A stretch of DNA of 64,000 bases, taken from Paragordius varius (Eukaryota > Animalia > Nematomorpha). Below the pieces are notes generated by a model. That model was not told where the DNA came from and searched no databases. It worked only from the letters and a program-made list of their open reading frames with translations. Location: the NCBI GenBank assembly GCA_964247055.1, contig OZ176052.1, positions 8,494,001-8,558,000 of the forward strand, read 5' to 3'. Both the position numbers and the translations under genes were made by a program. Positions 16,001-51,900 of the stretch are shown here, piece after piece. Numbering within the stretch: position 1 is the first letter of the stretch; each line of letters starts with the position of its first letter.

Positions 16001-18612
16001 GCATTAAATAAACGAGCCAAACCGAAATCGGCCAATTTTATTTGCCCTCTATAAAATATAAATTATTGAAGGTAGTTAAATATAAAAATCTACACTACTA
16101 AATTCGTTCCTATAACCATTTAAAAAATATAATTGGTTTTAACAGGTAATGCATATGAAAAAGCGAAATAAGGAACATATAATTCATCAAAAATTAAATC
16201 AACTAATCCAAAATCACCCTCAATAAGAACTAAAATAACCATCAATGTCCAAACCTTTTGCACACCATATCCCCAAAATAATGTAAATTATTTTTCATAT
16301 AATAAAACTTTGTAAAAATTGAAACATTTTACACTATCTACCTGTTATTAAGCAAAATGTTAGATCCTTTAATATCGCGATGCAAAAAATTTCGGGAATG
16401 ACAGTAGGCCAGCCCATCCAACAACTGTTTAATGTAGGATGCAATGTGTTGATGACTGAATGCAACCATACCGCTATCCAAAATGCCCATTAAATCATGG
16501 TCCATATACTCAAACACCAGGTAAAAGGCACCTAATAAATAATATGCAATATATATATATAATGGTTCCCAACCTTTTTTGTTGACGCCCCCAACGAATC
16601 GAGAAAAAAAAACTTACCATCTTTATGCTGTTTGAACTCAAGGGCATCCGCTTTATCCGTTACGATATCTTTCAAATTAATAATGTTTGGGTGTTGGAGT
16701 TGACATAAAATTTTTATTTCGCGAACGGCTGTGATGGGAAAACCTTCCTTTTCGTTTTCAAGACGGACCTTTTTAAGGGCAACGATATCACCTAAAAAAG
16801 TTATCATTAGAAATCAGTAATCAATAAAAAAATAATTTTCAAATAATATATAAATTGAAAATATATACCATCAATTTTATCTTGAGCTTTGTAAACTTGT
16901 CCATACGTGCCTTCCCCAATTTGTGCCATAATATCGTACATATCCAAATATTTCTTACCAAATGTATGTTTATATGCATTTTCTTTATCCAAAATGCTAT
17001 GAAATACAAATTAAATGACAATGTTTTGAAATATAATAAAAAGAGGATTATACATTTTAGGTTAAATGCATAAGTGCGTCAAAACAATAAATAAATTAAA
17101 TTATAATAATGTGCAAAATAGGCATTTATGAATAACTAGGTTGGTTGTTGCACAAATATTTAAAAAACGTGACTAAATATTGTGGTTTCCAGTTCATTCA
17201 AAATTACAAAATAAAACTTCCAGATCGAGGGTTTATGTCAAACGGCTGTAATTACCGTTATTTAAAGCATTTAAAATAAATAGCTAACAAATAATAAACA
17301 TAGGAGCTACTTTTCTCTAAAATACATACTTATAAATATAACAAAAAATAAATATCATATGGGTTATTAAAAATTAGAATTCGTCCAAAACATTTTTCGA
17401 TTAATTTCTTTTTTAATATATTTGAGAATTAATGTGTTTCACCAATAAAAAGAATTAATAGCAAAATATTCAGAACTATATAAATTACTACTAAAATATT
17501 AAAAAGGCGAGTGATATATTCTAAACAGTAAAATAATAACAAATTTTATATAATAGCGTCATTAAATTCCAAATTAATAATTTATCCAAAAAATAATATG
17601 TATTTACCAAATTTTTCCACGTAATATGTTGCGGTCAGCAAGAGGGATGGACGATGATGATGGTAACCTTTTTGCTTCATGAAATGATGAAATGTGCGTA
17701 GTATTAGAGCTCTGATGTAATAAAACTTTTGAATTTGTTTTATGATGATGGTGTTCATAATTATTGTTAGTTTCATCGCTATCAAAGATTGGAGGTAAGG
17801 GTAAAGATGTGATAGATTTTGTGGTCGTTACCGATGTGACAACAGATTCTGTAATAATATTGGGGGATTGGGTTTTTAATTCTTTCGATATAATATTCTT
17901 TAAAGGTGATAGGATAGATTTTTGCTTCTGTGTTGGATTTGAAGATTCTGGGGAAATATTGTTATGTAATTTAACTGTGCCTTCTGACTTTTCATCCACA
18001 TTAATTGATGATACGCTATCAGTTGGCAATTCTATATTAGTAATGTCAGTGTGGTTTATTGGAAGAGGTTCATTATTATTAATTTGTTTAAGTGGTTGGA
18101 TAACTTTTTCAATTTTAGGTTTTGATTTTTGGGATAATTTTTCAAGGGCTTCGCGGTCTTTACGTATTTCAGCAGCTAAATTTTCAGTGTATTGATTCCT
18201 CATGCGCAAAATGGCACTCAAATTGGAATCTTGGTCTTTAGAATGTTTTTTGTGCTTTTTATGCTTGTGGCTCTTTTTCGCTTTTTCATCATGATGCTTA
18301 GAACTTAACGGTTTGGGTGAAGGACTTCTTCGATTCCGATGATTAAACTCATAATCATGTTTATGCTTCTTTTCTTTTGGTTTATGCGTTCTAAAAGTTA
18401 ATCGAAAATATACCTATCCTTTTTTGAAAAATATGGACTTGGTGTTTTATCTCCGTGAATATCATCGTAGTGACGCTTTCTGGAAACACTATATAATAAA
18501 AAATATATAAATTATAAAACGATTTTAAGGTTTAATAGTGAATCACATACCTAGATGATAAACTTTCATCAGAACTTATATCTACATAAAAATTTTTTCG
18601 AGGTTTTGACAT
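13039..18612 (-). CDS. CDK12: cyclin-dependent kinase 12/13 (about 987 aa), 13 exons
   Basis: Exons (minus): 18612-18551, 18488-18414, 18390-17608, 16996-16869, 16791-16618, 16531-16342, 16048-15887, 15677-15483, 15169-15038, 14749-14574, 14174-14149, 14091-13975, 13782-13039; total 2964 nt, all phases consistent. Motifs: [105 protein letters not shown]. Confidence 0.95.
18391..18413 (-). other. candidate 23-nt GT-AG intron (CDK12 intron 2)
   Basis: GTATATTTTCGATTAACTTTTAG joins a 75-nt exon to the next exon in phase 2; retention gives an in-frame TAA. Skipping the 75-nt exon also keeps frame, so the call is less forced than in DPH5. Confidence 0.6.
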
Positions 18613-30224: not shown

Positions 30225-32465
30225 TCATAATTTTCTTAATTCAAATGTAGCGTTTGCAGGGGTATCAGCAACATCACTGGGTAAATTGCTTTCATTTTCA
30301 GTGTTTATAAACTTTTGAAGAGTAACTCGTATGTCCTGCTTTTTAGATAAAAAATCTGAATCATTTTTCGAATTTATGCCATTTGTTCCATTTTCTGACT
30401 CATCAACTAACAAAGAAGCCATTTGACTTGAATGTGGTCGACTCCAAGGATTACTAGATGAAGCACTCTCTATTGATTTAAAAATTATTTTCACTTAAAA
30501 TATAAAAGTATGATATGAGTATATAAATCATTACATTAACGAAAAGTATTATTCTGGTATTAATTGCCTAAAGGGAATTTAAGTTACATGTCTGTGGCCT
30601 GGCATAAGATTTTTCATTCCATTACTTGCATATTTAATAGAAAATAATAATTTTTTCTCTTTAAGGTATATAAGGTCGAAAAATTTCATACATATCGTTA
30701 AACATTAATGTTTATAAAAATATGATTGTCTTTATTAAAAAAAACATTTTTCCATTTGACTTTTACGCTTTATCCTTAAAATTTTAATTTTTACTGTAAT
30801 ATATATTCAGAAAAGAAAAAAGGGAATATACCCAACAATTTCATATAACTCTCATTGATTTCAGCACTCCGTAACGTTGAAGCTTCAATGGCGGCTATAA
30901 GGGAGGCACGAAAACCCATTTTCTCCAGAATGTACACGCTGCGTGCTGTACAACCACCCGGGGAACAGACATCCCCTTTAAGAGCACCGAGTCCTGCATT
31001 GATACTTTCACTTGGATGGGCTGGATAATTGACGATAAAATTTAAAATTAAAAAAGACAAATATTTATCATTTTCAACTAAAAAATTTCATTTAACATTT
31101 AAATATTTCATCCATGTTTTACGTGTTAATTTTTTTTAAAAAAAAGATTTATCCAGGCAAAACTTTATTTTTCATTTATGGTTAACATTTTTAAATAAAT
31201 GTTCTGCATTGATATTGCCACTGGGGTGCTCATGATAATATTATACAACTTTTTCAATGTTTCCAAACATTAATGAAGACTTATTTCAAATATCCTATTT
31301 TAATTTTCTTATTTCGTCGAAACTGAAAAAATTATTTAATCATGTATTACATACTAGCTATAAATTCATAAATAACAATTATTGTTAACGAATTAAAACG
31401 GGAGCCTAAAATTATAAACGATTTTTAATATGAATATCCTAAGTTAATTTTATTAATCATGGGCGATTTTATAAAAATGTCATCTAAATCATGTTTTAAA
31501 CAAAAACTGTCATAAAAACATCCAATTTTAACACATACCCTTTAAGCACATTTGAGCCGCACCAATGAGCGTATAAGCAGCTAATCGTGTGGCCTGGGCT
31601 CGGGAAAGACCCATCATAACAGCCCCGTCAACAAGAGATTCCAGAAACATGAAAGTATAAGCCGGACCGGACCCGCTCAATGCAGTAACGCTATCCATTA
31701 GGCTTTCATCTTCCAATTCCTCAACCATACCCACGGAACCGAGAAGAGAAACTAGGAGTTTAGGGTCGCTTGGTTTAACACTGTTCCCTAAACAATAAAC
31801 CGAGGTTCCTTTACCAATTTGCATAGATATGTTGGGCATAACACGTGCTACACGGGTGTGTTGGGGTAAGGCCTAAAAATATAAAAGTAAAAATTAAAAT
31901 CAGAGATAAAACATAGGAACTAAAAGGACACAATTATATATTACATAATTGTAATCATAAGGTTTATGTAGGAATCAAGGTCTTTCAAAAAAATATCTGT
32001 CTTTTGAGAGTTTAGTCTGTATTTCAATTATTTTAGTTATTTAATCTATTTTTAAAACTAAATCAATCGATTAAATACCTTTTCTATAAAATTAAGGGTG
32101 CATCCCAGGGAGAATGATAGGATAAAGTGTTTTTTAGCAACGGCTGAGGCTATTTCAGGTAAAATTATAGGCATGACGTTTGGTTTAACGGCTAATATAA
32201 CTACATCACTAAACTTCATAACATCATTATTACTGTGAGTGGTATCGATTCCTAGTTCCTAAGCATTATTTAATTAAACATTACTGATATGGAATCCAAA
32301 AAAAGGCTATCAACTTTTGTTTTTGGGGCACTTGCAATAATTTGATTAGATTGATACTTGCCTTTTTGTTAATATATTCATACCTGATAAGAGCAGGCCT
32401 TTTGTCATCGCTTGTGCGACTTTACCTGCTCCAATAAAACCAATCCGCATTGCTGCCTTACTCAT
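30225..32465 (-). CDS. PYCR: pyrroline-5-carboxylate reductase (about 368 aa), 6 exons
   Basis: Exons 32465-32384, 32361-32285, 32258-32079, 31872-31539, 31020-30832, 30469-30225 (1107 nt). Motifs: RIGFIGAGKVA, VVILAVKP, RVMPN, VTALSGSGPAYTF, LKGDVCSPGG, GFRASLIAAIEAS. The last exon is a non-conserved tail with an alternative acceptor at 30493. Confidence 0.93.
32259..32284 (-). other. 26-nt GT-AG intron (PYCR intron 2)
   Basis: GTAATGTTTAATTAAATAATGCTTAG; retention gives an in-frame TAA; removal gives LFLDSIS|ELGIDTTHSN, aligning without a gap to the P5CR family. Confidence 0.88.
32362..32383 (-). other. 22-nt GT-AG intron (PYCR intron 1)
   Basis: GTATGAATATATTAACAAAAAG; removal gives GLLLSG|KYQSNQIIASAP (cf. 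human PYCR1 GFTAAGVLAAHKIMASSP); retention frameshifts to a stop. Confidence 0.88.
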
Positions 32466-32636
32466 GGTAAGTATGAATGAATAGAACCTCAGATAATAAA
32501 GATAGTATTAGTTAAAATTTAATTTAATCTGCTTTTCAGAGATTAAAAGGGATTAAATACGTTGTATGATTGTTTCATAAAATATAATTTAAAGCGTATG
32601 ATAAATTTGTATATCACATTTTTAGGTTAGTTACTC
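32466..32636. promoter_or_regulatory. 171-bp divergent (bidirectional) promoter/5'UTR interval between PYCR and DPH5 start codons
   Basis: Head-to-head ATGs at 32465 (-) and 32637 (+). No specific promoter motif recognised. Confidence 0.6.
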
Positions 32637-33624
32637 ATGCTTTTTTTAGTTGGACTTGGTTTATCTGGTATTAAAGATATTAGTTTAAAAGGCATTAAAA
32701 TAATACGTTCTGCGGATAAAATTTATTTAGAGACTTATACATCTATATTATTGGATAACATTAATGACGAATTGGTATCCATTTGATATTAATTATTAGA
32801 CCGCTTTTTATGGTAAACCTGTAGTATGTCTGAATCGTGAAGGAGTTGAGGAAGATAATGGTATTATTTAAATATATTTAGAATATATTATCGAAGCAAA
32901 AAATTTAAATATTGTCCTTTTAATTATAGGCGACCCTTTATCGTATAAATTAACATAATTTTAGCGCAACAACTCACTCCGAAATTTTATATAGATGCAT
33001 TCAAAAAAATATTCCTTACAAAATAATTCACAATGCATCCATATTGACAGCTATAGGAGATACTGGATTACAAGTTAGTTGTGTAAAATATGTAAGTTAT
33101 ACCGGTTTGGTGAAATTGTTTCTATTGTGAATTGGACTGAAAATTATCAACCTACAAGTTTTTACGACAAAATTGAGCAAAATCTGAAACGAAATTTACA
33201 TACTTTATGTTTACTTGGTAATGCAATATAGTATATTTAGATATTAAATTGCAAGAAAAATCAGTTGAAAACATCATAAAGTAATATTTTGATATTTAAT
33301 TATAATTAGAAACCGGAATATATATGAACCACCATTTTTTATGACAATTAATCGAGCTTTAACAATTTTCACAAAAATTATGGAAAACTCAAGTTGTCTC
33401 CTAAAACGTAAAATAAAAATAACCATATAGCTTCAACTAGATGCTTTGGTGTTGCCAGATTAGGCTCAGAAACTCAATGTATTGCCTCTGGGGAAATCCA
33501 AGAATTATTAAATTTTGATTTTGGCCCAGAGTTACATTCATTAATAATTTGTGGGGAAATGCATGATTTAGAAATGTTTTTTTATAATCATTTTCACATA
33601 TCAAAAATAAATCCAATTTATTAA
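32637..33624 (+). CDS. DPH5: diphthine methyl ester synthase (273 aa), 8 exons, all introns 21-29 nt
   Basis: Exons 32637-32774, 32800-32860, 32882-32942, 32965-33073, 33097-33217, 33241-33280, 33310-33407, 33431-33624 (822 nt). Protein: MLFLVGLGLSGIKDISLKG..KIYLETYTSIL..LIIGDPLSATTHSEI..IIHNASILTAIGDTGLQLYRFGEIVSI..SFYDKI..LHTLCLLDIKLQE..IYEPTIFMTIN..CFGVARLGSETQCI..GPELHSLIICGEMHDLE, collinear with DPH5 over its full length. Confidence 0.95.
32775..33430 (+). other. seven ultra-short GT-AG introns of DPH5
   Basis: 32775-32799 (25 nt), 32861-32881 (21), 32943-32964 (22), 33074-33096 (23), 33218-33240 (23), 33281-33309 (29), 33408-33430 (23). Each removal restores the conserved frame. Confidence 0.92.
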
Positions 33625-34088
33625 CATATATCACAATTTTTAAAGTAACTATATAATATAAGCCAGGTATTTAAAAAACCAAAATCAATGATATTATTAA
33701 GTGATATGAAGTTTGATGATATATATTTACAAGAATATTTATACTGAGAACATGAATCATGTGTATAAGCAATATTTCCAATACCCAAATTAAAGAAATT
33801 AATATTATTAGCCGAATGTAAATAAAGAATATCTAACATTTTTTGATAGACATTTATGTTTCTAATAGATGGAGGAATTTGGATAAATTCATTTGATAGT
33901 TCAATCATATAGTTGGTAAAATCATGTTTGGAGGGATTATTTCGATAAACATAATATACTAGTGTGGAGCCAGATATAAAAAAGCCAGATTTTAGAGGAT
34001 TGTTTTTAATATCATAAAAGAGATCTCTAAAAGCGATTCGATAATCTGCCAATAAAGAGGTTGCTTTATTTTGGATTAATTTGAGCAT
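33621..34088 (-). CDS. TIMM29: mitochondrial import inner membrane translocase subunit Tim29 (155 aa, apparently intronless)
   Basis: SLLADYRIAFRD..IKNNPLKS..NPSKHDF..IPPSIRN..NFFNLGIGNIAY..QYKYSCKYI..IIDFGFLNTWLIL..KNCDI matches the Tim29 pattern (cf. human ALLRDY..RARP..APATRN..YVNLG..LDVGFVGRWWVL..DCDIN). Confidence 0.85.
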   Translation of the reverse strand: MLKLIQNKATSLLADYRIAFRDLFYDIKNNPLKSGFFISGSTLVYYVYRNNPSKHDFTNYMIELSNEFIQIPPSIRNINVYQKMLDILYLHSANNINFFNLGIGNIAYTHDSCSQYKYSCKYISSNFISLNNIIDFGFLNTWLILYSYFKNCDIC

Positions 34089-34451
34089 AAACGCGCCTTA
34101 CATACAAAGGTAAGATGTGTGTTTGAGATATTAATAATTTTCACTATTATTTTTTTTTACTTTTTTGTACTAATTTGCTTTTTGGGGTAGTTTTACATCC
34201 TAGGCTTAGTTTTTTAAATAAACTACAATAATCTATTTCAGTTTAAATTTAATTATTCAACATTGTTCTTTTGTATTAGAGAAAAAGTTTGATTTTTAAC
34301 AGTATTGTGACTTCTAGAGTCTTAAATTGGACCACAATCGAACTATACAGCAGATTTTAAATATTTTTTTAATTAAGTTTTGCTGGTAAGATGCAGTCTG
34401 GACGAGGGTTAATTATTTACAATTCTAAAATATATTTGCCTATTGTATTAA

Positions 34452-35042
34452 CACTTCGATTCAAATTGGGGCATCTAAATATCCTAGGCTTAATTTAAAC
34501 TGATATTATAAAATATCTACTGATGGCAACGGTTCCAATTAAAAATTACTTCTATCTTATTAAAAAAATAAGTCAAAATATCTAAATAAAATTTTGTTTT
34601 AAAAAAAACTTCCATGTCAAACTACTTCGACGCCATTTTTATTTTACAAATTTTTGCAAAATATCGTCTTCATCTAATTTTAAGGGTAAAAGCTAATTTT
34701 TTATTTAAATTACATCTAACATTGATGGAAATAGAAAAAGCAGTTTTGTATTATTTTTCAATTTCACATTGCACACATGTCACGTTTACCAAATTTTAAC
34801 CTTTCGGTTTTAGCTTAAAATAAACATTATGAAGTATTTTTCAATTAAAATTTTTACATATTTCGGTTTATTAATGTTATATAAATGCAAAATTTTGCCA
34901 TGGTTTCAATTTCTTCCATAATTTTTTATAGAATTTAATTTTAAAAGGCCTAGGTTCTTGTATATAACACATTCATTTCAGTCCTTCGATTCAAATTGGG
35001 GTAGTTATTGGGTATTTAGATACCCCAATTTGAATCGAAGTA
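34452..35042. mobile_element. TTAA/piggyBac-type MITE, 591 bp
   Basis: TTAA at 34448-34451 and 35043-35046; inverted termini cacttcgattcaaattgggg / ccccaatttgaatcgaagta. Confidence 0.85.
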
Positions 35043-48987: not shown

Positions 48988-51900
48988 ATGGGACCTTCTA
49001 ACAGCTCTCGGAAACTTACGACGATTTTTGCGTCAGCATGTTTCCTTATAGTAATGATAACATGCTTCGTAATTTTACCCTATTTTTACAGTCAAATGTC
49101 GAGTCTTAAAACTGAACAAAAAATTATTGTGGAAGATATGATTCATTCTTTGATGGAAAAACAAGTGATTGTCGAACAAATGGAGGCCGAACTCAAACGA
49201 TTAACGGTAATTAAAATGTTACTAAAGAAAAGTAATTTTACCAATGATTAACTTTACATTGACATAACCTACATTTGAAGCAAGCATATTAATGTATATG
49301 GAAACTATTGCAAATAATCCTTAAACTGTAACTATACATTACTATAGATAAAATATAAACATACCAATTTATTTTTTATAATCTTGATAGTTATAGGAAA
49401 TGGTAAATATAATCACGTATGGCTAATACTAGTTTTTATACATACGATCATATTGAAAAACATAAATTAAGTTTGAGGTTGTTTTTTGTTTCGCATCAAT
49501 TCAATTTTACAACCACACATGAGTTTGCATTATTATCCAATTAATTTTAATCACTCATATATATACAATTGAATAAAATAATTAGGAACTTAAAGAGAAA
49601 ACTTTGGCAAAAAACGGGAAAAGCCGCCGAATTGCTCAATACAAACGCTCAAAACGGAGTGCTGAAAGTGAGACAGCAGAAGTTGCCAACCCTGATGCAT
49701 TAACTGGTATTTCTTTAGTTTAGCGATATTTGTTTTAATAGATCCTAGCATATAATTATTAAAATATTTCTCTCCTCCAGATAAATCATCAGTGACCGAT
49801 AGTAAATCTGGATCATTGAGCGAACGTAGCAAGCGGACTGATTATCATCACAGTTATGATGATTACGGTGAACCACGTGGGACGAAAGATGTCGAAGCTG
49901 GCAGAGATGATGCAAGATACATTGAATTGCTCAGAAATTTACAACAAACTGGTAAACATTATATCACTTAACAAAAAAATATATTTATATATTCCAATCC
50001 ATTGTGTTTTAAAAATATATTTTTTTGTTGGACATAGGCGGGATTGTTGAAGTAGATTGCGGATGCCCAAACGGAAAGCCAGGTGAACCTGGTCCCCAAG
50101 GACCAGCAGGTAGCGCAGGTCAACCTGGAAGTCCCGGAAAAGATGGACAGCCTGGTCGACCAGGCCATGACGGACAACCAGGCAAACCCGGTCCAGATGG
50201 AAAACCAGTAATGAATTGATTAAAAATTACAAAAATTAGATTAAAGTCAAAGCTATAAATTGAAAACGCCCTTATTTGATGGTTAACATATTAATATTTT
50301 GTAAAGAATCTCATTATGCCTCCCTATTTTATTGGACTTTGGTGCGCATAAATTACCAATGTTGTCAATTAATTATAGGGCCCTGCCGGACCCCCAGGTC
50401 GAAATGGTAATGATGGAAGACCAGGAAACGCTGGACAAAATGGTCGCCCAGGACCAGACGGACAGCCAGGTCGAGATGGCCAACCCGGACGTGATGGACA
50501 AAACGTATGAAATAAAAGAATTTTATTGATTATTAATTCCCTAAAAACACTTTTTTTATATTAAACGATTTGATTTGAAAAAGAATAATTACTTAACTGT
50601 TTCCAAAATATAGGGTTCCCCTGGTAGAGACGGTGAACCGGGTCGTGATGGCGAGCCAGGATCCCCAGGCGAACCTGGAAAAGATGGTGGAGATGGAGAA
50701 CCAGGAAAGCCAGGTCAAGATGGAGCCCCTGGACCAAGAGGACCCGGTGGACCTAAAGGTATGTTAGTGTACATAGAACACATTAATTAGTAACTAAAAA
50801 TTGAATTAAATTACAACACAAATTTTGTGAATTAGAGTAATAAAGATAAAACGTAAAAAGTGAAAAATTAATATTTATTTTAGAAAATCATATATTTTAT
50901 AACTTTCTAAAAATATTCTATAGTTTTGGGTTTTAAATGTATGATGTGGTACTTTTTGTATCGCAACAGTAATTATATAGTTAAATAGGAAAAATTAAGA
51001 AAAAATATGGTAATTTTTATAAATATGTCTTTTAATTTTGTATCTCTTTAAAATTTTAACTTTCAATTAATTAATAGAAGGTTTTGTTAGCAAATATATA
51101 TTTGCCTTTTTATTAAAAAGCAATGTAAAAAATATAATCCAACGATTTTAATATCTTCAGCATTTATGTAATACTAAAATGCAGATAATTTCATACAATT
51201 AACTATAAAAAATGGTTAAAATATACAATATAAATACATCATGTTATCATAGGTGTCGATGGCCAACCCGGAATCCCTGGCCGTGATGGTCAACCTGGCA
51301 AAGATGGGCTACCAGGAAAACGTGGTCGTGACGGGAATCCCGGGATTGATAGTAAGGGTCCAGGACCAGCTGGTGATGCTGGAACACCGGGGAGAGATGG
51401 ACAGCCTGGTTCGCCAGGACCTGACGGTAAACCCGGAAGAGACGGGAACCCAGGACGCGATGGCCAACCAGGAAACCCTGGAAAGGATGGAGCTTCTGGT
51501 TCCCCGGGTATTGATGGCCCACCCGGCAAAGACGGTATCCCAGGCCAACCTGGTAAAGATGGACCAGCCGGTAACCCTGGCCGAGATGGGAAACCTGGTA
51601 TCCCAGGCAAACGTGTAAGTTAAAAATCATTATTACCCGTAATTAATGACTTTAAGTATTTTATTTAAAATAAAAATTTTATATGTAAATAAAGGGATCC
51701 CCTGGAGATGCCGGTCCTGATGGTAAAGATGGCTTGTCAGGAAAACCAGGTAGAGATGGAATCCCAGGCTCAGATGGTAAGCCAGGTGTTGATGGACGTC
51801 CTGGAGAAAATGGATTGCCCGTATAAATTTTGTTATTTTGTTTGATTCAAGGCAATCCCAAAAACAATAATCTAACCACTATGTTTTTGTTCATTCTTAT

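What the first reader, a model, noticed from the sequence alone, without database searches (positions are those of the whole stretch)
32259..32383. One gene, two intron size classes: PYCR has 22- and 26-nt introns followed by 206-518-nt introns
Seen: PYCR introns are 22, 26, 206, 518 and about 362 nt. Nine tiny introns fall within 1.2 kb (32259-33430) around the PYCR/DPH5 promoter, while KANK, the collagen and PKC have none. Across the core gene models here, no intron lies between 30 and 56 nt. Inference: a bimodal length distribution implies two recognition modes in one spliceosome, or local pressure for compaction near shared promoters. Co-occurrence within one gene argues against contamination.
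Basis: partly seen in the sequence, partly recalled or inferred. Interest (0 to 1): 0.75.

Follow-up and report, generated by a model that had tools for sequence, protein, structure and literature searches.

The report
Tiny introns at gene starts
In this AT-rich animal genome many genes start with introns of only 21-36 bases and continue with ordinary long ones; the PYCR gene is one clear example of that layout, which is published for flatworms but not at this extreme.

Summary
PYCR (minus strand, ATG at 32465) has introns of 22, 26, 206 and 518 nt, each supported by exon-by-exon matches that run in order along the PYCR family profiles. The fifth intron (about 362 nt) cannot be checked. DPH5, which starts 171 nt away on the other strand, has seven introns of 21-29 nt, so nine tiny introns lie in 32259-33430.

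The shared promoter is probably not the cause. I curated 90 introns from 13 genes, most from other chromosomes. Of these, 22 are 21-36 nt (mode 23), none is 37-56 nt, 13 are 57-86 nt and 55 are over 100 nt. In all 8 genes that have both tiny and long introns, every tiny intron comes before every long one (joint p about 7e-9). The cluster is therefore two gene starts placed head to head, one of them a very short gene.

KANK and PKC show no tiny introns, but their 5' ends appear to lie outside the window. The collagen is a real exception.

All length classes share GTA...AG signals, so separate splicing machinery is not shown. Two short length modes with the shorter one at the first intron positions are published for flatworms, and introns under 30 nt for myxobolids and Dicyema. 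This scan has already noted the same pattern on many other windows of this genome. I had no RNA data and did not verify the organism.

The parts
32384..32465 (-). PYCR exon 1 (ATG at 32465-32463)
   Evidence: Matches TIGR00112 positions 1-18 and NF005063 positions 1-21. Translation shown.
32362..32383 (-). PYCR intron 1, 22 nt, GT..AG
   Evidence: Read; GT/AG checked. Removing it joins exon 1 to exon 2 in frame (82+77 = 159 nt). Read-through reaches a stop after 11 codons.
32285..32361 (-). PYCR exon 2 (25 aa plus a split codon)
   Evidence: No family hit of its own. Its length fills profile positions 19-44 between exons 1 and 3.
32259..32284 (-). PYCR intron 2, 26 nt, GT..AG
32079..32258 (-). 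PYCR exon 3
   Evidence: TIGR00112 positions 45-103; F420_oxidored positions 44-92 of 94.
31873..32078 (-). PYCR intron 3, 206 nt
   Evidence: GT..AG checked. Essentially unique in the genome: one self match plus two 42-nt matches.
31539..31872 (-). PYCR exon 4
   Evidence: TIGR00112 positions 106-213; P5CR_dimer positions 1-54.
31021..31538 (-). PYCR intron 4, 518 nt, phase 1
   Evidence: GT..AG checked. Single copy in the genome. The exons on either side are in order on P5CR_dimer, 1-54 then 61-104.
30832..31020 (-). PYCR exon 5 (end of the conserved domain; its 3' limit is uncertain)
   Evidence: P5CR_dimer positions 61-104 of 105.
30470..30831 (-). Putative PYCR intron 5, 362 nt, unverified
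   Evidence: Chosen by my gene-finding script; starts with GTATAT and ends with AATAG. The downstream exon matches no family.
32466..32636 (.). 171-nt spacer between the diverging PYCR and DPH5 start codons
   Evidence: Start-codon coordinates.
32637..33624 (+). DPH5 gene, 8 exons, 822-nt CDS
   Evidence: open frame; phases consistent; TIGR00522 positions 1-43, 89-124, 125-164, 201-249.
32775..32799 (+). DPH5 intron 1, 25 nt
32861..32881 (+). DPH5 intron 2, 21 nt
32943..32964 (+). DPH5 intron 3, 22 nt
33074..33096 (+). DPH5 intron 4, 23 nt
   Evidence: Profile positions 124 and 125 abut across it.
33218..33240 (+). DPH5 intron 5, 23 nt
33281..33309 (+). DPH5 intron 6, 29 nt
33408..33430 (+). 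DPH5 intron 7, 23 nt
18391..18413 (-). Tenth tiny intron of the window, 23 nt, in the 5' part of a CDK12-like gene; followed by introns of 611, 77, 86, 293, 209, 373 and 288 nt
   Evidence: the only GT..AG solution found that joins the two flanking peptide tags.

Best explanation
PYCR shows the usual gene layout of this genome rather than a local oddity. Its introns are ordinary GT-AG introns of the major (U2-type) spliceosome that fall into separate length classes: a tiny class of 21-36 nt (mode 23), a short class of 57-86 nt, and a broad long class from about 100 nt to over 1 kb.

The tiny class sits only at the 5' end of coding regions, always before the first long intron. In most genes the donor site of the last tiny intron lies within about 300 nt of the start codon. 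In DPH5, a 988-nt gene with no long intron, it reaches 771 nt. Because PYCR and DPH5 start 171 nt apart and point away from each other, their tiny introns add up to nine within 1.2 kb.

Shown: the lengths, the order within genes, and the shared signals.

Inferred: tiny introns are ancestral introns shrunk to the smallest size the spliceosome can handle, about 12-16 nt from the 5' splice site to the branch point and 5-10 nt from there to the 3' end. They are recognised across the intron. They persist only near the cap and promoter, where recruitment of the splicing machinery is helped and lengthening is selected against. Downstream introns are free to lengthen and use the ordinary geometry, which needs about 57 nt or more. 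On this reading the empty 37-56 zone is a steric dead zone between the two geometries.
For: - Exon-by-exon profile matches in order for PYCR and DPH5.
- All 19 tiny introns analysed have GT and AG at their ends, and the three added were found as GT..AG solutions. Removing each restores the reading frame and the continuity of the conserved protein.
- The same layout occurs elsewhere. Chaperonin genes located begin 24,71,73 then 287; 27,28,36 then 461; 66,29 then 188; 28,84,57 then about 1186; 23,23; and 25,26 then about 590. An ATG16-like gene begins 25,22 then 879. The CDK12-like gene has 23 then 611.
- Of 90 curated introns, 22 are 36 nt or less, none is 37-56, 13 are 57-100 and 55 are over 100. 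In all 8 genes with both tiny and long introns the tiny ones come first, joint p 7e-9. The chance of no value in 37-56, if sub-100 lengths were uniform over 21-86, is 3e-6.
- Signals: A at +3 in 74-91% of introns in every class. Tiny introns have an A-rich spot at -12 to -8 from the 3' end (+17/+18 from the 5' end), and 12 of 19 carry a TAAY motif whose branch-like A lies 5-10 nt from the 3' end.
- Full-length U1 and U2 snRNA genes are present.
- Coordinates-only hits from other families agree: Ras-family genes with estimated 23-26-nt gaps at profile positions 47-70, and one Ras-family gene whose whole domain is interrupted by only about 108 nt in total.
Against: - No RNA evidence; every intron is inferred from frame restoration and homology.
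- The sample is 13 genes, eight of them from one family, and the long-intron boundaries come from my own gene-finding script.
- The 5' rule is not universal. The collagen (first intron 379 nt, about 220 nt from its ATG), one CCT gene (61 nt), HSP60 (76 nt) and a PP2C gene (310 nt, script model only) have no tiny intron.
- The 37-56 zone may not be truly empty. One intron is 36 nt, and a kinase gene at G000:C1:9148800-9148836 may hold one of 37-43 nt. Ras-family gaps of 40-46 nt could not be resolved.
- The cap-proximal and steric parts of the mechanism are inference only.
Confidence: 0.75

Rival explanations
1. Two different recognition pathways within one spliceosome. Introns of 36 nt or less would be recognised as one combined 5' splice site and branch site, perhaps without normal U1/U2 pairing across the intron or with variant snRNAs. 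Introns of 57 nt or more would use the standard pathway.
For: - No intron of 37-56 nt among 35 introns under 100 nt.
- Tiny introns leave only about 12-16 nt between the 5' splice site and the branch-like A.
- C at -3 occurs in 1 of 19 tiny introns against 17 of 55 long ones, Fisher p 0.03.
- Many divergent U1 and U2 gene copies exist.
- Tapeworm authors made a similar suggestion, as quoted in PMC4040987.
Against: - All classes share the same kind of signals, and pyrimidine content at -14 to -4 differs little: 0.57, 0.63 and 0.66.
- There is no biochemical or RNA evidence.
- The divergent snRNA copies may be pseudogenes, and I could not read them.
- Organisms with only tiny introns are reported to use a conventional spliceosome (PMC13644364).
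Confidence: 0.2
2. Local compaction around the shared PYCR/DPH5 promoter. Introns are tiny here because this gene island is under pressure to be compact.
For: - The island is very compact: a 171-nt spacer between the diverging genes.
- DPH5 and Tim29 share a TTAA for both stop codons.
- All seven DPH5 introns are tiny.
Against: - The same 5' tiny introns occur in genes on contigs 1, 2, 4, 6 and 7 and in the CDK12-like gene 14 kb away.
- PYCR itself carries 206- and 518-nt introns inside the island.
- A Ras-family gene elsewhere looks all-tiny as well.
Confidence: 0.06
3. Gene class rather than position decides. Broadly expressed housekeeping genes keep tiny introns for economy or speed; tissue-specific genes do not.
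For: - Genes with tiny introns: PYCR, DPH5, six CCT genes, CDK12-like and ATG16-like.
- The collagen has none.
Against: - Within the housekeeping genes only the first one to three introns are tiny and the rest are long, so class alone cannot explain the pattern.
- One CCT gene and HSP60 have no tiny intron.
- No expression data.
Confidence: 0.15
4. Artefact: the interruptions are assembly indels, pseudogene damage or a chimeric join, not introns.
For: No RNA evidence was available.
Against: - Every interruption starts with GT and ends with AG.
- The lengths cluster at 21-29 nt.
- Removal always restores the frame and the order of the profile matches, across 10 independent genes with tiny introns.
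- The sequence has no N and is contiguous.
Confidence: 0.02

Closest known systems
Bimodal short-intron lengths with the shorter mode at the first intron positions in parasitic flatworms (Gyrodactylus salaris, modes about 32 and 58 bp; tapeworms; PMC4040987)
   Same: Two separate short modes plus a long tail. Short-mode introns dominate ordinal positions 1 and 2, and later positions are taken by longer introns. The authors also speculated about changes to the splicing machinery.
   Different: Here the short mode is about 23 nt, below the 30-bp limit. The separation is sharper in my sample (nothing from 37 to 56 nt). The tiny class was never seen after a long intron. By earlier notes of this scan the animal is not a flatworm; I did not verify this.
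Ultra-short introns of myxobolid myxozoans and Dicyema japonicum (PMC13644364)
   Same: GT-AG introns of 20-30 nt in an animal. The 5' signal is reduced to GTA. There are weakly conserved A residues before the 3' end. U2 snRNA is present.
   Different: In those lineages the median intron is 22-27 bp, so most introns are tiny. Here only 22 of 90 are tiny, the median is over 100 nt, and tiny introns are confined to gene starts. That paper found no extra features in longer introns; here long introns use C at -3 more often.
Minimal-intron peak plus long tail, as in Drosophila and C. elegans, discussed in PMC4040987
   Same: A sharp peak at a species-specific minimum length sits beside much longer introns in the same genes.
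   Different: Those peaks lie well above 23 nt (from my own knowledge, about 47-65 nt), and they are not confined to the 5' end of genes.
Tiny introns of ciliates (Stentor 15-16 nt, cited in PMC13644364)
   Same: Canonical spliceosome components together with introns far below 30 nt.
   Different: In Stentor essentially all introns are tiny, with no second class and no positional rule.

Membership tests
Major (U2-type) GT-AG spliceosomal introns | GT at the 5' end and AG at the 3' end | tested here: met
   All 19 tiny introns and every other intron in the 85-intron signal set pass a GT/AG check. The three further tiny introns found were obtained as GT..AG solutions.
Major (U2-type) GT-AG spliceosomal introns | Removal restores one open reading frame that runs in order along a conserved protein family | tested here: met
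   PYCR on TIGR00112 and P5CR_dimer; DPH5 on TIGR00522; chaperonin junctions solved with peptide tags on both sides.
Major (U2-type) GT-AG spliceosomal introns | Branch-point motif upstream of the 3' splice site | tested here: inconclusive
   A TAAY motif lies 5-10 nt from the 3' end in 12 of 19 tiny introns, and A reaches 58-74% at -12 to -8. Such motifs are common by chance in AT-rich DNA, and no branch point was mapped.
Major (U2-type) GT-AG spliceosomal introns | Removal from mature mRNA | not testable with these tools
Myxobolid/dicyemid-type ultra-short intron genomes (PMC13644364) | [quoted passage not shown] | tested here: met
   21 of the 22 tiny introns are 21-29 nt.
Myxobolid/dicyemid-type ultra-short intron genomes (PMC13644364) | Ultra-short introns are the majority (median 22-27 bp) | tested here: not met
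   Only 22 of 90 curated introns are 36 nt or less, and 55 are over 100 nt. The sample is small.
Flatworm-type bimodal, 5'-biased intron architecture (PMC4040987) | Two separate modes below 100 bp plus a long tail | tested here: met
   Lengths of 21-36 nt and 57-86 nt with nothing between, and 55 introns over 100 nt.
Flatworm-type bimodal, 5'-biased intron architecture (PMC4040987) | The shorter mode dominates ordinal positions 1-2 | tested here: met
   Tiny introns make up 9 of 13 at position 1, 7 of 12 at position 2, 2 of 11 at position 3 and 4 of 54 at position 4 or later; those last four are all in DPH5.
U12-type (minor) introns | 5' splice site RTATCCTT and branch site TCCTTAAC | tested here: not met
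   Only DPH5 intron 1 starts with GTATCC; the other tiny introns start with GTAW or GTTW. U11 and U12 snRNA genes were not searched.
Pyrroline-5-carboxylate reductase (PYCR/ProC) | N-terminal NADP-binding domain plus the P5CR dimerisation domain, in order | tested here: met
   TIGR00112 positions 1-18, 45-103 and 106-213; F420_oxidored 44-92; P5CR_dimer 1-54 and 61-104. Each exon scores below the whole-protein cut-off on its own; the joined protein was not searched.
Diphthine synthase (DPH5) | Matches in order to TIGR00522 along the whole length | tested here: met
   Positions 1-43, 89-124, 125-164 and 201-249 of 258 from four exons. The joined protein was not searched.

The most novel reading that the evidence does not exclude
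The zone with no introns of 37-56 nt, together with the strict confinement of introns of 36 nt or less to the stretch before the first long intron, could mean that this animal runs two mechanically different splicing routes. One would be a cap- or promoter-proximal route that handles a combined 5' splice site and branch site only 12-16 nt apart, perhaps using one of the many divergent U1 or U2 snRNA copies. The other would be the ordinary route for everything else.
Probability: 0.15. Interest if true: 0.8.

Novelty: new member of a known kind. Interest (0 to 1): 0.5.

Why it matters
A 2026 survey of 51 animal genomes (PMC13644364) found introns under 30 bp only in myxobolid cnidarians and Dicyema, where nearly all introns are tiny. 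This genome mixes tiny and long introns within single genes under a strict positional rule. That makes it a natural test of what sets the minimum intron length and of whether distance from the gene start matters for recognising an intron.

There is also a practical point. Standard aligners and gene finders with minimum intron settings of 20-30 nt or more will break or miss compact genes such as DPH5 and the first exons of many housekeeping genes in this assembly.

Tried and rejected
1. Estimating the intron-length spectrum without gene models, by counting GT..AG segments that bridge two open frames against decoy dinucleotide pairs. Noise swamped the signal in 64-264 kb. After I added a codon-score filter the known tiny introns were lost too.

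2. A gene-finding script of my own with no preference for any intron length.
   - It chained neighbouring genes into one, or linked nothing when the gene-start and intron penalties were equal.
   - With decoy splice signals it gave similar long-intron lengths, so it cannot validate exact boundaries.
   - Even with splice-site weights it missed DPH5 and the first two PYCR exons, whose AT-rich short exons score too low.
   - I therefore used it only with anchors from family matches or after checking by eye.

3. Fetching more of the genome.

That ruled out looking at the public annotation, naming the organism, or comparing intron positions with other species.

5. The idea that PYCR's long introns are recent transposon insertions. 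Both are essentially single-copy in the genome.

6. The idea that intron 4 grew by duplicating the edge of exon 5. There is a 39-nt copy at 74% identity 210 nt upstream, but its alignment score is within the range of shuffled sequence.

7. A clear polypyrimidine-tract difference between classes. The difference is small: 0.57, 0.63 and 0.66.

8. The organism's identity therefore rests on earlier unverified notes.
Full report
**The observation**

The window is 27-32% G+C in most 2-kb bins, with a few bins up to 39%, and contains no N.

PYCR is on the minus strand.
- Its start codon is at 32465-32463.
- Introns: 32383-32362 (22 nt), 32284-32259 (26 nt), 32078-31873 (206 nt) and 31538-31021 (518 nt).
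- All four start with GT and end with AG.

I searched the exons one at a time by reference.
- They match the proC model TIGR00112 in order, at positions 1-18, 45-103 and 106-213.
- They also match F420_oxidored at 44-92, and P5CR_dimer at 1-54 and then 61-104 of 105.
- Exon 2 has no hit of its own, but its 25 residues fill the 26 profile positions between exons 1 and 3.
- Exon lengths (82+77 = 159, 180, 334 nt) keep the frame. Without splicing, exon 1 runs into a stop 11 codons later.

The conserved domain ends inside exon 5. The proposed fifth intron (362 nt, 30831-30470) would only add a tail that matches no family. I treat it as unverified.

DPH5 starts 171 nt from PYCR on the other strand.
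- It runs from 32637 to 33624 and has seven introns of 25, 21, 22, 23, 23, 29 and 23 nt.
- The 822-nt CDS is open from ATG to stop.
- Four exons match TIGR00522 at 1-43, 89-124, 125-164 and 201-249. Positions 124 and 125 abut exactly across the 23-nt intron.

The joined spliced proteins were never sent to any search tool; only single exons were.

**The rest of the window**

- Tim29 (33627-34088, minus strand) is a single exon. Its stop codon overlaps that of DPH5 within one TTAA.
- A CDK12-like gene on the minus strand has a further tiny intron of 23 nt at 18391-18413. It is followed by introns of 611, 77, 86, 293, 209, 373 and 288 nt.
- The collagen (ATG at 48988) has introns of about 379, 86, 86, 171, 109, 494, 80, 137, 357, 109, 179 and 191 nt and no tiny one. 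Its first intron lies only about 220 nt from the ATG.
- The KANK-like gene is already in an open frame at window base 3. Only its ankyrin repeats were confirmed.
- The first PKC exon found in the window carries the pseudosubstrate and the start of the first C1 domain. No start codon or upstream exon was found in the window.
- So 'no tiny introns in KANK and PKC' refers to 3' parts of genes only.
- I found no intron of 30-56 nt in the window models.

**Beyond the window**

A six-frame search of the window's own genome (110.6 Mb, 44 contigs) with the chaperonin family located nine genes and returned 30 loci. I solved the 5' junctions by finding short peptide tags on both sides and requiring GT..AG and a consistent phase.

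First introns, in order within each gene:

| Gene | Introns, from the 5' end (nt) |
|---|---|
| Chaperonin A | 61, then 589 |
| Chaperonin B | 24, 71, 73, then 287 |
| Chaperonin C | 27, 28, 36, then 461 |
| Chaperonin D | 66, 29, then 188 |
| Chaperonin E | 28 (directly after the ATG), 84, 57, then about 1186 |
| Chaperonin F | 23, 23 |
| Chaperonin G | 25, 26, then about 590 |
| Mitochondrial HSP60 | 76 |
| ATG16-like (contig 1, 200-kb block) | 25, 22, then 879 and seven more long introns |

Stops flagged inside downstream chaperonin matches sit at the match edges or belong to introns of roughly 70-110 nt. None marks a tiny intron.

**Numbers**

- I curated 90 introns from 13 genes: 22 of 21-36 nt (mode 23), none of 37-56 nt, 13 of 57-86 nt and 55 over 100 nt.
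- In each of the 8 genes that have both tiny and long introns, all tiny ones precede all long ones. The joint probability under random order is 7e-9.
- If lengths under 100 nt were spread evenly over 21-86 nt, the chance of none falling in 37-56 nt would be 3e-6.
- Tiny introns make up 9 of 13 first introns and 7 of 12 second introns. At position four or later they are 4 of 54, and all four are in DPH5, which has no long intron.
- The 57-86 class is not tied to the 5' end. The CDK12-like gene has 77 and 86 after a 611-nt intron, and the collagen has about 80-86 at internal positions.

Caveats:
- The sample is small and eight of the genes belong to one family.
- Long-intron boundaries come from my own anchored script.
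- The empty zone may be only a trough. One intron is 36 nt. A kinase gene at G000:C1:9148800-9148836 may hold one of 37-43 nt. Three Ras-family gaps of 40-46 nt between matches could not be resolved without sequence.

Coordinates-only hits otherwise agree with the pattern.
- Ras-family genes show estimated gaps of 23-26 nt at profile positions 47-70.
- One Ras-family gene at G000:C5:5361143-5361730 covers the whole 160-position domain in 588 nt, which suggests several tiny introns as in DPH5.
- A proteasome gene has an in-frame 24-nt excess containing two stops.

**Signals**

- All classes prefer GTA at the 5' end: A at +3 in 74%, 91% and 75% of tiny, short and long introns.
- Tiny introns have T at -3 in 79% and C in 5%. 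Long introns have C in 31% (Fisher p 0.03).
- Pyrimidine content at -14 to -4 is 0.57, 0.63 and 0.66 for tiny, short and long.
- Tiny introns have an A-rich spot at -12 to -8 (58-74% A), which is +17/+18 from the 5' end. In 12 of 19 there is a TAAY motif whose branch-like A lies 5-10 nt from the 3' end.
- The classes therefore look like one kind of intron with the spacing compressed.
- Full-length U1 (8 copies over the cut-off) and U2 (35 copies) snRNA genes are present, with many divergent copies in arrays. I could not read them.

**Tests of other ideas**

- Shared promoter: the layout recurs at loci on five other contigs, and at the CDK12-like gene 14 kb away. PYCR itself has long introns inside the compact island. 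The promoter is therefore not needed as an explanation.
- Transposon origin of PYCR's long introns: both are essentially single-copy in the genome.
- Duplication of the exon edge in intron 4: there is a 39-nt copy at 74% identity, but it scores no better than shuffled sequence.
- Gene class: this may add something, since the collagen and a PP2C gene have long first introns. It cannot explain why only the first introns of housekeeping genes are tiny.

**What is known**

- PMC13644364 reports introns under 30 bp in animals only for Myxobolidae and Dicyema, with medians of 22-27 bp and a 5' signal reduced to GTA.
- PMC4040987 reports two short modes (about 32 and 58 bp) in Gyrodactylus. The short mode dominates intron positions 1 and 2. 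It cites the tapeworm bimodality and the suggestion of a modified splicing or export machinery.
- Two papers on horsehair-worm genomes held in the library do not mention introns. They give genome sizes of 200-300 Mb, and 26.9% G+C for Gordionus.
- Earlier notes of this scan call this genome a horsehair worm. I did not verify that, and its 110.6 Mb is smaller than those reports.
- The scan has already noted the two-class and 5'-first pattern on many other windows of this genome. I tested it independently here.

**Most likely mechanism**

- Shown: separate length classes, strict 5'-first order, and shared signals.
- Inferred: tiny introns are ancestral introns shrunk to the physical minimum and recognised across the intron. 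They are kept only near the cap and promoter. Downstream introns lengthen freely and need about 57 nt or more for the ordinary geometry, which leaves a steric dead zone between the two.
- A truly separate pathway remains possible. I put it at about 0.15-0.2.

**Verdict**

This is a new member of a known kind, more extreme than the flatworm cases and arranged differently from the myxobolid and dicyemid cases.

Noticed in passing
window 18391-18413 (minus strand): A tenth tiny intron (23 nt, with a GATTAAC motif and a TTTTAG end) in the 5' part of a CDK12-like gene.
   Followed up: yes
window 33621-33624: DPH5 (plus strand) and Tim29 (minus strand) converge, and one TTAA supplies both stop codons.
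   Followed up: partly
window 31201-31239 versus 30991-31029: PYCR intron 4 holds a 39-nt copy, at 74% identity, of the boundary between intron 4 and exon 5, 210 nt upstream of the real one. Its local alignment score (28) lies within the range of shuffled sequence (mean 25, maximum 45), so it may be chance.
   Followed up: yes
L026:1172-1202 (G000:C7:1467928-1467958): One chaperonin gene seems to have a first coding exon made of the ATG alone, followed at once by a 28-nt intron.
   Followed up: partly
G000:C6:565331-633363 and G000:C3:257436-526980: Arrays of U1 (17 hits, 31-124 bits) and U2 (46 hits, 38-178 bits) snRNA genes with many divergent copies. They may be variants or pseudogenes; the sequences could not be fetched.
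   Followed up: no
G000:C5:5361143-5361730: A Ras-family gene whose whole 160-position domain is covered by four back-to-back matches in 588 nt, with stops at the joins. It looks like a second gene with only tiny introns, as in DPH5. Coordinates only.
   Followed up: no
G000:C1:9148800-9148836: Two kinase-domain matches with no internal stops, abutting on the profile (70-126 and 125-181), lie 37 nt apart. This may be an intron of 37-43 nt, inside the otherwise empty zone.
   Followed up: no
window 34450-35040: Copies of a roughly 20-nt motif (CCTTCGATTCAAATTGGGGT) occur in both orientations near 34450, 34985 and 35020, which suggests a small inverted-repeat transposon in the gene-free stretch after Tim29.
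   Followed up: no
window 48988-49206 (plus strand): Collagen exon 1 gives only a weak match, below the cut-off, to the nematode cuticle collagen N-terminal domain (E 0.004, 17.6 bits against a cut-off of 23.5).
   Followed up: partly
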